64,000 bases of DNA from Salpingoeca rosetta (Eukaryota > Protista > Choanoflagellata), in assembly GCA_033442325.1 (NCBI GenBank), contig JAWQFM010000024.1, forward strand, positions 1,074,941 through 1,138,940, given 5' to 3'. A program made the position numbers and the translations under genes. This document shows, one piece after another, positions 13,785 to 32,807 of the stretch. The notes under the pieces are model-generated. The model saw only the letters and a list, made by a program, of their open reading frames with translations. It was not told where the DNA came from and did not search any database. Numbering within the stretch: the stretch's first letter is position 1; each line of letters starts with the position of its first letter.

Positions 13785-16700
13785 TCATGGCTTGTGGCGC
13801 TTTTGCGGGTTGCCATCACCCCCAGACGCGTGAGGAGCAGCAGCTTGAGGGCCTGTCGAGGCGGAGGTGGTGATGGTGATGGTGGCGTGAGTGGCGTGAG
13901 TGGCGTGGTGTTTGGTCGACATGTGCACGCGGCACAAAGGCGAAGGAGCAGAAACCAACACCCCACTACCAGCAGCAGGCACAAATACCCAAACAATTAA
14001 CAAGCAAGTTAATTCCACCACATACGTTGCGTGCGAGGATCCGTTGGCAGACCTGTTCACACACACACACATGTGATGGCAGCATGAGCATTCGAAAATG
14101 GAAGCAACTGTGATCATACATGCACAAAACACGACGACCTCTGCCTCCTGCAATCACAACCCCCCCCCCCCGCCCAAACGCATCTTCCGACCGCGTGACG
14201 CAACACATCTGCAGCATGATGCAAGAGGGGGCGTCACCTCCAATGTTGCGGAGTTCTGTCATGAGTGCCTGCCCGTGGGCCTGGAGGCTCTCAATTTCCC
14301 GCTGAAGCGTTGCCTCATCCTTGTCGAAATCAGCCAACTCCGCTTGCACGCTGCGATTTGCAGAACCACAAAGGGTTGGCAGGTGGAATGGTAAGTGGGC
14401 TGAATGAGTGGGTGTGCTGCGACAAGGGCTACACACTGTTGACAAGGGAGGTACGATCACACAAGGAGAACGCCCACACGCAACAAGGCACAGGGTTGAC
14501 GGTTTCAACGTTGCAGTTCAACTGCACAACTCCGGCACGTGCAATACGCGACACGCCATCAGAACTCACGTGAAGAAGTTGTCACAGTACGGCTGGGCGG
14601 CGCGGAGGGCGCGCAGCTCGTTCGACTCCTCTGCCTTGAGCCACACGCACCCGTGCAGCTGTCGTGCGAGGTGACACAAGCAGGGGCTGCAGATGAGACA
14701 ACAACGACGTGGGGCTGTCAAGGAGTTTGCCAAACGCTCACAGCAAGATGGCATTGGCAAACACACACACACACACATCAAGCATGTACTTGATAGGTTC
14801 CTTTTTTTTTTTTCACCTTGTCCAGTGGGGGCACTTGGCCGCTTCTGCCGCCAAAGAAACCAAGCGAATCAACCTTGCGCATGTCCCTGGATCACCAACA
14901 ATTGTACACGATGAGTCATGAGCGTAGATGGGGGCACGCAATCACACGAGTGCGCTCGCACAGCGGATACAAACAGAGAGAAAGAGAGGGGGACAGAGAC
15001 AGAGAGAGAGAGAGACAGATAGTGACAGAGACAGAGACAGAGACGGACAGACAGCAGACGCACGCACGCACGCACATACATACAAACACAACAACAACAA
15101 CGACAACGACGACAACGACGACAACAACGACAACAACGACAACAACGAGCGAGTGTTAGGGGCAACAACATCAACAGTATCCAAGGGCCGCATGTGTGAG
15201 CAAGTTACTCACTGGGTGAAGAGCGTACGGAAAGACAGTTCGCGTGCCGTGGGCTGGCCCCGGCTGCTGCGGCGGCTGTCGGCCCTGTCGGCCTGATCGC
15301 GCGCGTCACGGAAGGCGACGGCGGTGTCCATATCCTTGAAGACGTACAGCCCGTGCAGCATTCGGTTGAGGAGGCCAAACAGCCGCTCATCGTTCACCTG
15401 AAGACGAAACATAAGGAGGAAGGTGAAAGGGAGGGGGTTGTTGGTGAGGGAGTTGCAAGGGTAATTAAACTGTTGCTGCACGTACGATGCACGTCTGGTG
15501 CACACACACACACACAGACACACACACACACACAGACACACACATATACAGACAGACACACGCACACGTACCCGCGGGGTGATGTAAGACGAAAGCGCAC
15601 GCCCGCCGAAGCGCGCAACGGCGCTTGGTGTGTCTTGTCTGAACGGCTGACGGGGAAGACGTTCGATGTCGCGAACGGAGTAACTCCTTTGCAGCTTAAG
15701 TGCCGTCTCCCGGCGCACGCAGATGATGGAGTTGATGTGTGACCCGAGCGCATAGCTGGCCAGGCGCTGCGACATTTGATCTTCGGCCTCCAACAGCTCG
15801 CCCACAAACCCGAGCACGTCCTGGCCCCGGAAGCGGGCCGGAACCTGCTGGGGCTGTAGCAGCAACGATGGTGGTCATGATGGGAGTGGTGGTGGTGATG
15901 ATGGGGTGTGCGCAATGTGGGCAAGAAAACAAAAGCGGAGATGAGAGCGGTTACATCAAACCAAAAAGCATCATCAGCGCCAACAATCAGTCTTGGTGCA
16001 CAGGATTCAGCTTCAGTCTGTCTGTCTGTGTGTCTGTGCGTGTGTCTGTGTGTCTGTGTGTGCGTGCGAGTGTGTGTGACAGCATTGTATCGCTGCCTGA
16101 GTGCGCACCTCACGGCCACCGCGTCGACGGGATGACGTCCGCTGCGCAATGAGTTCAGCGCACGCGTCGGGATGGCGCAACAGGTCCTCCGCCCGCAGCT
16201 GCTCCCGTCCATGATGGTGTCGATCGCGATCACGATGGTGGTGGTCGGTGATGATCAAGCGGAGTGTTGAGTGAGACAGAGGATGCGTTCGTGGTGTCAC
16301 ATTCGCGCGCGTGCGCATATGTGCATACATGCAGGTGTGTGCTCACCGCTGTGCGACGGCGCGATCGAATGTGGTGGCGCAAAATGTCCTCAATGGTGCT
16401 GAAGATCACGCACACATGATGATGAGCACATGTAAGGTGGCAACGATGATAGTGATAAACGGGAGTCGTGGCGGTGCTTGTGGTGGTGGTGTGGACATGA
16501 AGAAGGGGGGGGGGTGGCCTCACGCTTTGATCTTGCGGAGCTGCGAAAACTTTTCGAAGGCGGCCTTTGTTGCGCGGAGCTTCTGCTGTTGTTGCTGTGG
16601 TAGCAATGGTGGTGGTGATGTGATGGAGGTGGGGATAGTTGGGAACAATGTGAACAAAAACGAGACAATACGCGCACACAGACACAGACACAGACACACA

Positions 16701-31700: not shown

Positions 31701-32807
31701 GCACGCACACACACGCGGACTCACGCACACACGCACACACACACACACGCGCACGCACGCACGCGCGGACTCACGGGCGACGATGAGAGGTGGTGTAGTG
31801 ATAGCGCGCAAATGCTTGGATGTCGGGCTTGTCCATGCCTGTTCCACTGTCAACAATCGCTGAACACATGAACGGCACGCACGCAGGTGTGTTAGAGACG
31901 AACGCACGAGTTGTGGTGTAGAAGGTGGTCGAGAGAGGTAGTTGCGGACAAGTATCCGCATTTCTGTTGTCCGCATGTCACCATGCACCATCTGCTCAGG
32001 ACGTACCAAGGATGGGCTCGTCGCCTTCACGCATGACAATGATCTCAATCTGCTTCTGCTTCATCTTGCGCACGGCCGTCAGGGAGTTATCCACAAACTC
32101 CGCCAGCGCACAGACTGATGTGTGTGTGTGTGTGTGTGTGTGTGTGTGTGTGTGTGTGTGTGTGCGAGAACGTGTGGAGGAGACATGAGCAGGTGGGTAA
32201 GAGATCCATACACATGGGCAGTGCGAAAGCTGTCAATAATCCACGCACAAACACACACACACACACACACATACTTAACCATACGCACACACAGAAAAAT
32301 GCGTTACGCACTCGAGTCTTTGCAGAGGGTTGTGTCGCCATACTGGTCTTCACCAGCACAGGTGACCGTGTCGTGATGAGGGATGAAAGCAATGTGGTCG
32401 CGGTGCTCCGTGGTGTTGGCAGCGGTACTGGCGGTAGCGGAAGCCGAAGCAGAGGCGGAAGATGTCCGCCCACTCTCGTCAACAGCGGCAGAGTCGTCCT
32501 CCACAATCACGGCGTCGTCGCCGTGATTGTCGAGGTTACTGTCTTCATCATCGCCATCATCATCATCATCGTCGTCGTCGTCCTTACCGTCACCGTCGTC
32601 GTCGTCATCGTCCACAACGACGGTGCGCGGCGAGCGCCTGCGGTCCTGTGTCACTTGTCGTGCCTGAAGATCGCGCGCGGTGTTCCTCGCTGTCTTTCGG
32701 GCCGTCACACGGCGCGGCGCCTGGGTTTGCTGTGTTTGCATGGGGGACTGCCCCGGCAGCAGTGGCCCGCTCTCCGTGTCGGGCCCGCTGTCCATCGTCT
32801 CCGACAT
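13785..32807 (-). CDS. SMCHD1: SMCHD1 orthologue: GHKL ATPase, transducer, BAH-like region, Ig-like linker, coiled coil/SMC hinge; many exons
   Basis: Motifs colinear with human SMCHD1: [70 protein letters not shown] (cut by the gap), [24 protein letters not shown]. Hinge: [47 protein letters not shown] 32807; stop 13785. Confidence 0.92.
26090..26211 (+). repeat. (GTC)n(GTT)n intronic microsatellite in SMCHD1
   Basis: Seen directly. Confidence 0.95.

What the first reader, a model, noticed from the sequence alone, without database searches (positions are those of the whole stretch)
13785..32807. Full-length SMCHD1 orthologue in an apparent unicellular holozoan
Seen: all four GHKL motifs intact (catalytic Glu in LAEFVDN, DSGTG, FGVGAK, YTCVVI), plus SMCHD1-type motifs ([18 protein letters not shown]) and a C-terminal SMC hinge. 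Established: SMCHD1 is the chromatin silencer of the inactive X, D4Z4, Hox/protocadherin clusters and imprinted loci, studied mainly in vertebrates; plants have the GHKL-hinge protein GMI1. Inference: an SMCHD1 silencing or repair system predates animals and must act on different targets here, such as transposons or this repeat-dense genome.
Basis: partly seen in the sequence, partly recalled or inferred. Interest (0 to 1): 0.72.

Follow-up and report, generated by a model that had tools for sequence, protein, structure and literature searches.

The report
Choanoflagellate SMCHD1-like gene, split by annotation
The choanoflagellate Salpingoeca rosetta, a single-celled relative of animals, very probably has one 19-kb gene for a roughly 2,000-residue protein of the SMCHD1 chromatin-silencer family, which the public annotation cuts into two unnamed genes at an assembly gap; the find is useful but expected, because this protein design was already known to be ancient.

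Summary
All seven quoted motifs are on the minus strand in N-to-C order. The genome is Salpingoeca rosetta (scaffold GL832977.1), not a contaminant.

- a 470-aa GHKL model (32807-29319);
- PTSG_08498, 1435 aa, with the hinge (27164-13785).

The models most likely form one gene of 56-57 exons and 2020-2033 aa:
- Four or five canonical GT-AG exons bridge them in phase.
- The bridge's coding score was reached by 0 of 300 shuffles.
- One bridge exon is the genome's only match to Pfam SMCHD1_S5.
- The assembly gap lies in an intron between phase-0 exons.

Family placement:
- Three exons hit the human SMCHD1 ATPase structure collinearly.
- The hinge's only PDB match is the SMCHD1 hinge.
- Language-model neighbours are SMCHD1 clusters.

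Gaps in the evidence:
- No phylogeny could be built.
- No UBL domain is detectable.
- No relatives were retrieved.

Pre-animal origin of this design was already published in 2008. The target and function ideas are untested. This is a new member of a known kind plus an annotation correction. The scan had not noted it elsewhere.

The parts
32312..32807 (-). Exon 1: start codon, basic stretch, poly-Asp acidic tract, then the lead-in to the GHKL fold. No UBL domain detected.
   Evidence: Start equals the public model's start. Donor chosen. Only acidic low-complexity hits in PDB and Pfam.
32007..32114 (-). Exon 2: GHKL motif I (LAEFVDN; predicted catalytic Glu171 and Mg-binding Asn175 of the merged model).
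   Evidence: Weak PF13589 match to profile positions 6-27. The acceptor is weak (-2.3).
31775..31859 (-). Exon 3: GHKL motif II (DSGTG).
   Evidence: Weak PF13589 match to profile positions 37-62. Splice scores 8.2 and 8.9.
31387..31510 (-). Exon 4: GHKL motif III (FGVGAK).
   Evidence: Matches 6MW7 chain 209-231, E 0.27..
30879..31100 (-). Exon 5: GHKL motif IV (YTCVVI).
   Evidence: No individual database hit.
30491..30608 (-). Exon 6: the IYHYYIHG motif, identical to human SMCHD1.
   Evidence: Matches 6MW7 chain 325-343. Spacing from motif III is 113 residues against 114 in 6MW7.
30201..30246 (-). Exon 7: 46 nt, needed to keep phase between exons 6 and 8.
   Evidence: Splice scores 7.5 and 6.1. 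Consistent with the 463+7=470 check.
29917..30018 (-). Exon 8.
29493..29580 (-). Exon 9: the last exon shared with the public 470-aa model. Strong donor after 29493.
   Evidence: Donor score 10.3. The same donor explains the public model's length.
29319..29342 (-). Inferred terminal mini-exon of the public 470-aa model (7 codons plus stop), which I reject as an artefact of the assembly gap.
   Evidence: A 150-nt intron from the exon-9 donor to an acceptor scoring -1.3 gives exactly 470 aa.
29123..29222 (.). Assembly gap, inside the intron after exon 9, with (CA)n on both sides.
28964..29002 (-). Optional exon 10: 39 nt, phase-neutral. Real or not is undecided.
   Evidence: Splice scores 9.9 and 5.4, coding score 0.62 per codon. 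Including it brings the IYHYY-to-FWNGRL spacing to 118, against 126 in 6MW7 (105 without it).
28705..28772 (-). Exon 11 (unannotated): the middle of the SMCHD1_S5 transducer domain, with FWNGRL.
   Evidence: PF22899 E 3.8e-4, profile positions 66-86. Only PF22899 match in the genome. Matches 6MW7 chain 450-468.
28172..28286 (-). Exon 12 (unannotated bridge exon).
   Evidence: In phase with canonical sites, coding score 0.44 per codon. No individual database hit.
27724..27825 (-). Exon 13 (unannotated bridge exon).
   Evidence: Acceptor 10.8, coding score 0.87 per codon. No individual hit.
27380..27460 (-). Exon 14 (unannotated bridge exon).
   Evidence: Donor 9.2, coding score 0.55 per codon. 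No relevant hit.
13785..27164 (-). The 43 exons of public model PTSG_08498 (1435 aa): central region, coiled-coil-like flanks and hinge. Its annotated ATG sits directly behind an acceptor AG.
   Evidence: Exact exon map. Protein identity. SMCHD1-like by language-model features.
15213..15853 (-). The two main hinge exons (15853-15572 and 15397-15213) with the intron between them.
   Evidence: PF06470. 6N64 alignment of P0001 1165-1343 to chain 40-215. Exon map.

Best explanation
Window 32807-13785 (minus strand) is one Salpingoeca rosetta gene of 56-57 exons. It encodes a 2020-2033-residue protein of the SMCHD1/GMI1 family.

Domain order:
1. A disordered basic and then acidic N-terminus.
2. A MORC-type GHKL ATPase with all four nucleotide-binding motifs.
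3. An SMCHD1-type S5 transducer domain.
4. A long, divergent central region.
5. A short helical stretch, an SMC hinge, and another short helical stretch.

The public annotation breaks the gene at an assembly gap.

By analogy with SMCHD1 (inferred, not shown here), the protein should form a homodimer through the hinge, which also binds nucleic acid. It should use ATP-driven association of its GHKL heads to hold or compact chromatin. This organism has no DNA-methylation machinery and uses H3K27me3 on retrotransposons and cell-type-specific genes, so the most likely role is repression of such loci or DNA-break repair. The target is a guess.
For: Shown by tools:
- Organism and native context: 100% identity to GL832977.1 of GCA_000188695.1, inside a 1.19-Mb scaffold with ordinary neighbours.
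- The motifs are present in order.
- Exons 1-9 plus a 7-codon tail reproduce the public 470 aa exactly.
- Large exons join directly, with GT-AG at every junction, into a stop-free ORF of 6063 or 6102 nt.
- The best-scoring bridge chain is the curated one, 75.43. It was reached by 0 of 300 dinucleotide shuffles; the opposite strand scores 24.8.
- Bridge exons score 0.44-0.87 per codon. Untrained exons 1-9 score 0.65 and introns -0.75 +/- 0.33.
- PF22899 hits the unannotated exon 11 at E 3.8e-4 and nowhere else in the genome. It covers only profile positions 66-90 of 168, so the rest of that domain must lie in flanking exons.
- Three exons match the same PDB chain, 6MW7, collinearly at 209-231, 325-343 and 450-468. 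No MORC structure appeared in those lists at E up to 10.
- Motif spacing is 113 residues against 114 in 6MW7.
- The hinge's only PDB match at E 0.01 or better is 6N64. PF06470 gives E 2.2e-4.
- The nearest language-model clusters are SMCHD1: 0.92, with 195 and 192 of 256 features shared.
- The locus is single-copy.

Established knowledge: SMCHD1 parts and mechanism (PMC7458401); S. rosetta chromatin (PMC12572184).
Against: - No RNA evidence.
- Some in-phase chain exists in 267 of 300 shuffles, so phase continuity alone proves nothing.
- Bridge exons 12-14 have no database match of their own.
- Every homology hit is individually weak, and none reaches a Pfam gathering score.
- No UBL domain is found.
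- Pfam's Ig_SMCHD1 families are not detected in the central region.
- Residues 1-450 of PTSG_08498 alone find nothing in the Atlas.
- No relatives were retrieved, so there is no phylogeny.
- Plants run a split version of this design (MORC6 plus hinge-only DMS3, PMC5651269), so two genes would not be absurd.
- The exon-2 acceptor is weak (-2.3).
Confidence: 0.75

Rival explanations
1. Two separate genes, as annotated. One is a short GHKL(+S5) protein and the other a hinge-bearing protein. They might work together, as plant MORC6 and hinge-only DMS3 do.
For: The public annotation has two models. No RNA link was obtained. In-phase chains arise easily by chance. Plants provide a precedent for a split arrangement (PMC5651269).
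Against:
- The only SMCHD1_S5 match lies in unannotated DNA beyond that supposed end.
- That domain is incomplete without exons 12-14.
- The bridge is coding-like beyond all 300 shuffles.
- The ATG of PTSG_08498 sits directly behind an acceptor AG, in an open frame.
- The merged size matches SMCHD1.
Confidence: 0.13
2. One gene, but a MORC-type or otherwise independent GHKL-hinge fusion, not a relative of SMCHD1/GMI1.
For: No phylogeny was possible. PF13589 is shared by MORC and MutL-type ATPases. The central Ig_SMCHD1 families and the UBL are not detected.
Against: - PF22899 is SMCHD1-specific and gave no match in the 14 control genomes, all of them bacteria or archaea.
- IYHYYIHG is 8/8 identical to human SMCHD1.
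- Three exons pick 6MW7 and none picks a MORC structure.
- The hinge picks 6N64 rather than cohesin or condensin hinges.
- The Atlas neighbours are SMCHD1 clusters.
Confidence: 0.05
3. Animal contamination or an assembly chimera that joins unrelated pieces across the gap.
For: An assembly gap lies inside the locus.
Against: - The locus sits inside a 1.19-Mb scaffold of the reference assembly, with native-looking neighbours.
- Intron size, (CA)n content and splice signals are the same on both sides of the gap.
- The coding score is the same upstream and downstream.
- Twenty listed runs from six studies of the same organism hold at least part of the stretch; five hold half its words or more.
Confidence: 0.02

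Closest known systems
Vertebrate SMCHD1 (human and mouse; PDB 6MW7 ATPase module, 6N64 hinge)
   Same: - Same order of parts: GHKL ATPase, SMCHD1-type S5 transducer, long central region, hinge flanked by short helical stretches.
- Near-identical size.
- Catalytic Glu and the four GHKL motifs are present.
- IYHYYIHG is identical; FWNGRL is near-identical.
- Spacing from motif III to IYHYY is 113 against 114 residues.
- The hinge aligns over about 180 residues. Lys aligns with mouse Arg1867 and the G-F-G-G and P-P-x-D-K-L stretches are kept.
   Different: - No detectable UBL domain. The N-terminus is a basic then poly-Asp disordered segment instead.
- The central Ig-type domains are not recognised by Pfam.
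- Several hinge DNA-binding arginines are not conserved in position; for example, Asp aligns with Arg1869.
- The organism has no X inactivation, no D4Z4 and no DNA-methylation machinery, so the known targets and read-outs do not apply.
Arabidopsis GMI1 (GHKL plus SMC hinge; DNA-repair role)
   Same: Same two-ended architecture outside animals. It shows the design is ancient (PMC5651269, PMC2292703).
   Different: No GMI1 sequence could be obtained. Whether this protein is closer to GMI1 or to animal SMCHD1 is untested. The identical IYHYYIHG motif and choanoflagellate phylogeny suggest the animal side (inference).
MORC1-4 ATPases
   Same: The same GHKL subfamily (PF13589), followed by an S5-fold transducer. 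ATP-driven head dimerisation; roles in silencing.
   Different: MORCs carry CW or coiled-coil tails and no SMC hinge. No MORC structure appeared among the PDB hits of any exon. The S5 match is to the SMCHD1-specific family.
Plant DMS3 with MORC6 (split hinge and ATPase)
   Same: Hinge and GHKL activities act together on chromatin. The Atlas lists a DMS3-like cluster as a distant neighbour, score 0.76.
   Different: There the two parts are separate proteins. Here the evidence favours a single polypeptide.

Membership tests
SMCHD1/GMI1 family | N-terminal MORC-type GHKL ATPase with motifs I-IV and a catalytic Glu | tested here: met
   The motifs were read directly. The public 470-aa model carries PF13589 on record. 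Single exons give weak PF13589 matches at the right profile positions. ATPase activity was not assayed.
SMCHD1/GMI1 family | SMCHD1-type S5 (transducer) domain after the GHKL fold (Pfam PF22899) | tested here: inconclusive
   One exon matches profile positions 66-90 of 168, at E 3.8e-4 and 20.8 bits against a cut-off of 27. It is the only match in the genome. The rest of the domain is spread over short exons that cannot be scored singly. The joined model was not searched.
SMCHD1/GMI1 family | C-terminal SMC hinge domain | tested here: met
   PF06470 over profile positions 3-114 of 116, E 2.2e-4, 22.1 bits against a cut-off of 22.5. The SMCHD1 hinge 6N64 is the only PDB hit, E 0.0045. The match is just under the curated cut-off, so it is met only narrowly.
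SMCHD1/GMI1 family | ATPase and hinge on one polypeptide | tested here: inconclusive
   Supported by the stop-free canonical exon chain, by the coding score beating 300 of 300 shuffles, and by the S5 exon in the unannotated stretch. There is no RNA evidence.
Animal SMCHD1 proper | N-terminal ubiquitin-like domain that stabilises the ATPase dimer (PMC7458401) | tested here: not met
   Exon 1 gives only acidic low-complexity hits in PDB and Pfam, and 6MW7 is not among them. Upstream exons are unlikely, since a divergent gene begins about 430 bp away. A cryptic fold is not excluded by sequence tests.
Animal SMCHD1 proper | Central array of SMCHD1 Ig-type domains (Pfam Ig_SMCHD1 families) | tested here: inconclusive
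   hmmscan finds none, even at E up to 1. Language-model features nevertheless place PTSG_08498 beside clusters that carry the 5th to 8th Ig families.
Animal SMCHD1 proper | Groups with SMCHD1 rather than GMI1 or MORC in a phylogeny; reciprocal best hit | not testable with these tools
   No SMCHD1, GMI1 or MORC sequence could be retrieved. Only a PDB-level proxy exists: the best solved relatives of both ends are SMCHD1.
Animal SMCHD1 proper | Hinge homodimer with nucleic-acid-binding arginines | tested here: inconclusive
   In the 6N64 alignment, Lys aligns with Arg1867 and Asp with Arg1869. The linker arginines fall in poorly aligned columns (residue list from PMC7458401). The single-sequence fold failed, pLDDT 33.
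MORC1-4 | GHKL+S5 followed by a CW zinc finger and/or coiled coil, with no hinge | tested here: not met
   A hinge is present. No CW domain turned up in any Pfam scan. No MORC structure appeared among the PDB hits.

The most novel reading that the evidence does not exclude
The ancestral job of SMCHD1 was silencing of retrotransposons or cell-type-specific genes in Polycomb-marked chromatin, without DNA methylation and without the UBL-mediated head dimer. S. rosetta keeps that state, so the mammalian roles (inactive X, D4Z4, clustered genes) are later co-options. This can be tested directly in a CRISPR-tractable unicellular relative of animals.
Probability: 0.2. Interest if true: 0.65.

Novelty: new member of a known kind. 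Interest (0 to 1): 0.4.

Why it matters
SMCHD1 is studied almost only in mammals, where its roles are tied to X inactivation, imprinting, clustered genes and human disease (FSHD2, arhinia). An intact single-copy family member in S. rosetta would allow a clean test of what the protein does at base. This organism is genetically tractable, lacks DNA-methylation machinery and has mapped H3K27me3 (PMC12572184).

The practical result is an annotation correction. Two 'hypothetical' proteins, one of them PTSG_08498, are very likely one 2,000-residue protein. Orthology pipelines and domain surveys that use the public proteome will therefore miss or misclassify it.

The evolutionary claim is not new. 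The GHKL+S5-hinge lineage was called ancient in 2008, and plants have GMI1.

Tried and rejected
1. Read laying. No RNA was laid. Before it, one search had scanned a piece that contains them.
2. Pfam and PDB on raw open-frame pieces gave almost nothing, because the exons are short.
3. The length-unrestricted search with a 124-aa central exon found only the protein itself and a spurious FN3 protein.
4. Three word searches found no relative and no transcript-derived fragment: the whole protein, the hinge region, and the N-terminal 110 residues with a short query length.
5. The metagenome-contig scan found nothing.
6. My first dynamic-programming chain padded itself with micro-exons of 3 to 21 nt. 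I rejected it as a scoring artefact and replaced it with direct joins of the large exons.
7. 'An in-phase chain exists' is rejected as evidence, because 267 of 300 shuffles also give one.
8. Read-through of the exon-9 donor as the end of the public model gave 520 aa, not 470. It was replaced by the 150-nt-intron solution.
9. Bridge exons 12-14 alone gave no SMCHD1 hits in PDB or Pfam.
10. The single-sequence AlphaFold model of the hinge had mean pLDDT 33 and was unusable, so no fold search was run.
11. The Atlas search with residues 1-450 gave no usable hit.
12. I did not scan public collections with a back-translated IYHYYIHG pattern. It is identical in human SMCHD1 and would mainly collect human-derived contigs.
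13. The joined (spliced) protein was never sent to a search or fold tool. It has no reference, so it was used only in local scripts for length, phase and codon statistics.
14. My recollection of the human SMCHD1 sequence suggested that exons 12-14 align with the human segment between the FWNGRL and YKAG motifs. That is memory only and is not counted as evidence.
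Full report
WHAT IS THERE

The region is a eukaryotic multi-exon gene with short exons and (CA)n-rich introns.

Earlier notes of this scan named the organism as Salpingoeca rosetta, and I confirmed it:
- A 124-aa exon given by reference retrieves a 1435-aa protein at 100% identity.
- Sources name that protein 'hypothetical protein PTSG_08498 [Salpingoeca rosetta]' and 'SMC hinge domain-containing protein'.
- Its locus, on scaffold GL832977.1 of GCA_000188695.1 (1.19 Mb), is base-for-base identical to the window.
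- The genome has 55.4 Mb in 68 contigs.

The neighbours are ordinary genes: PMSR, a beta-lactamase-fold protein, a TMC channel, and a divergent gene without Pfam domains. Contamination is excluded for practical purposes.

THE PUBLIC ANNOTATION SPLITS THE LOCUS

| Element | Window coordinates | Notes |
|---|---|---|
| Model A | 32807-29319 | 470 aa, carries PF13589 |
| Assembly gap | 29123-29222 | follows model A directly |
| PTSG_08498 | 27164-13785 | 1435 aa, no Pfam domain on record |

So 'full-length' depends on whether these are one gene.

THE GAP

The gap has (CA)n on both sides. In my model it lies inside the intron after exon 9. Exon 9 ends in phase 0 at a strong donor (after 29493, score 10.3). 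The next acceptors, at 29002 (9.9) and 28772 (8.7), both start in phase 0. The frame therefore continues without any letters from the gap.

The spacing from IYHYYIHG to FWNGRL is 118 residues with the optional 39-nt exon 10 and 105 without it. In the human structure it is 126. At most a small phase-neutral exon could be hidden in the gap.

THE GENE MODEL

I mapped PTSG_08498 exactly onto 43 exons. All 42 introns are canonical, one of them GC-AG, and their lengths run from 125 to 392 nt. I trained simple splice and codon models on that map.

A first dynamic-programming run reached the first exon of PTSG_08498 in phase, but it padded the chain with micro-exons. I rejected that result. Joining only the large, motif-bearing exons gives a stop-free frame from the ATG at 32807 to the stop at 13785. 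It is 6063 nt (56 exons, 2020 aa), or 6102 nt (57 exons, 2033 aa) with exon 10. Every junction is GT-AG.

An independent check supports exons 1-9. They encode 463 aa. The only well-scoring single change that reproduces the public 470 aa is a 150-nt intron from my exon-9 donor to a poor acceptor (score -1.3) at 29343, followed by 7 codons and the stop at 29319. The public model most likely shares my first nine exons and then ends artificially just before the gap. This rests on matching a single number, because I could not retrieve the 470-aa sequence itself.

The annotated ATG of PTSG_08498 sits directly behind an acceptor AG, in a frame that is open upstream.

HOW STRONG IS THE BRIDGE?

The existence of an in-phase chain is not evidence. 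With my thresholds, 267 of 300 dinucleotide-preserving shuffles of the 2.3-kb bridge also give one. What stands out is coding quality:
- The best real chain scores 75.43 and is exactly the curated four-exon bridge.
- No shuffle reaches that score, and the opposite strand scores 24.8.

| Sequence | Coding score per codon |
|---|---|
| Bridge exons | 0.44-0.87 |
| Exons 1-9 (not in the training set) | 0.65 |
| PTSG_08498 CDS (training set) | 0.71 |
| Introns | -0.75 +/- 0.33 |

In addition, exon 11, inside the unannotated stretch, matches the SMCHD1-specific Pfam family PF22899 (SMCHD1_S5) at E 3.8e-4. That is the only PF22899 match in the whole genome, and there was none in 14 control genomes. 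The match covers only profile positions 66-90 of 168. The rest of this domain must therefore lie in exons on both sides, across the public model's end and towards PTSG_08498. Exons 12-14 are too short (27-38 aa) to find anything alone.

No RNA evidence could be added. Those places lie in the intron between exons 8 and 9, and I sent none of their letters to any search tool afterwards. A search for transcript-derived ORFs spanning the junction found none.

I left out the joined step entirely. The joined protein was used only in local scripts.

WHICH FAMILY?

Three separate exons each pick the same chain out of 177,635 PDB sequences: the human SMCHD1 ATPase module 6MW7. The matches fall in collinear order.

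| Exon motif | 6MW7 chain residues | E-value |
|---|---|---|
| FGVGAK | 209-231 | 0.27 |
| IYHYYIHG (8/8 identical) | 325-343 | 0.57 |
| FWNGRL | 450-468 | 1.2 |

Each match is weak, but three collinear hits to the one chain the hypothesis names are far beyond chance. No MORC structure appeared in those lists. The spacing from motif III to IYHYY is 113 residues, against 114 in 6MW7.

Other family evidence:
- The hinge region of PTSG_08498 matches PF06470 over nearly the whole profile: E 2.2e-4, 22.1 bits against a cut-off of 22.5.
- The only PDB relative of PTSG_08498 at E 0.01 or better is the SMCHD1 hinge 6N64: E 0.0045, about 180 aligned residues, with the G-F-G-G and P-P-x-D-K-L stretches kept.
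- By language-model features, the nearest clusters are SMCHD1 clusters that carry Ig_SMCHD1 and SMC_hinge families (score 0.92; 195 and 192 of 256 features shared).
- The locus is single-copy.

DIFFERENCES FROM VERTEBRATE SMCHD1

- Exon 1 encodes a basic stretch and a poly-Asp tract. Neither the PDB search nor Pfam sees the ubiquitin-like domain that stabilises the vertebrate ATPase dimer (PMC7458401). A divergent gene about 430 bp upstream leaves little room for further exons.
- Pfam's Ig_SMCHD1 families are not detected in the central region. A central exon has no relatives among 1.8 billion representatives. The middle of the protein is very divergent.
- In the hinge alignment, Lys aligns with mouse Arg1867 and Asp with Arg1869.

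MECHANISM (INFERRED)

By analogy with SMCHD1 (PMC7458401), the protein should be a homodimer held by the hinge, which also binds nucleic acid. ATP-dependent association of the GHKL heads would let it bridge or compact chromatin.

S. rosetta lacks DNA-methylation machinery and marks retrotransposons and cell-type-specific genes with H3K27me3 (PMC12572184). Those loci, or DNA breaks as for plant GMI1 (PMC5651269), are the likeliest substrates. Nothing here tests that.

NOVELTY

- Iyer et al. [quoted passage not shown]
- Plants have GMI1, so a pre-animal origin is established.
- I found no paper that mentions SMCHD1 together with choanoflagellates or that discusses it in a unicellular relative of animals.
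- No searchable paper names the locus tags I tried: PTSG_08498 and its two neighbouring numbers.
- The S. rosetta chromatin paper mentions neither SMCHD1 nor MORC.

The result is a new member of a known kind, plus a correction of a split gene model.

VERDICT

| Question | Verdict |
|---|---|
| Observation | confirmed |
| One gene of the SMCHD1/GMI1 family | about 0.75 |
| Two genes, as annotated | about 0.13 |
| Interest | 0.4 |

Noticed in passing
window 26104-26213: A perfect (GTT)36.7 microsatellite, (AAC)n on the gene strand, with 100% matches. It lies in the intron between exons 3 and 4 of PTSG_08498, next to a 126-nt (GT)63 array at 25839-25964. Introns across the locus are packed with (CA/GT)n, and such repeats flank the assembly gap.
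   Followed up: partly
window 17746-17751 (intron after exon 17816-17752 of PTSG_08498): This is the only non-GT donor among the 42 introns of PTSG_08498, a GC-AG intron (AAG|gcaagt).
   Followed up: no
window 33236-37164 (+ strand): A divergently transcribed neighbour, annotated as 840 aa, with no Pfam family on record. Its longest ORF in the window (33068-35215, 715 aa) also has no Pfam hit. Its start lies about 430 bp from the SMCHD1-like start, which suggests a shared bidirectional promoter region.
   Followed up: partly
whole genome: C3:54499-54852, C4:1220856-1221020, C11:451903-452259, C1:2436780-2436905: Four other loci match PF13589 (the MORC/MutL-type GHKL family), three of them in long open frames of 578-888 aa. 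I did not determine whether any is a true MORC rather than a MutL homologue. That matters for what other GHKL silencers this organism has.
   Followed up: no
window 29319-29342: The public 470-aa model appears to end on a 24-nt terminal exon with a poor acceptor, right before an assembly gap. Gene predictions next to other gaps of this assembly (for example 3345-3444, 55391-56171 and 57973-58072 in this window) may be truncated in the same way.
   Followed up: no
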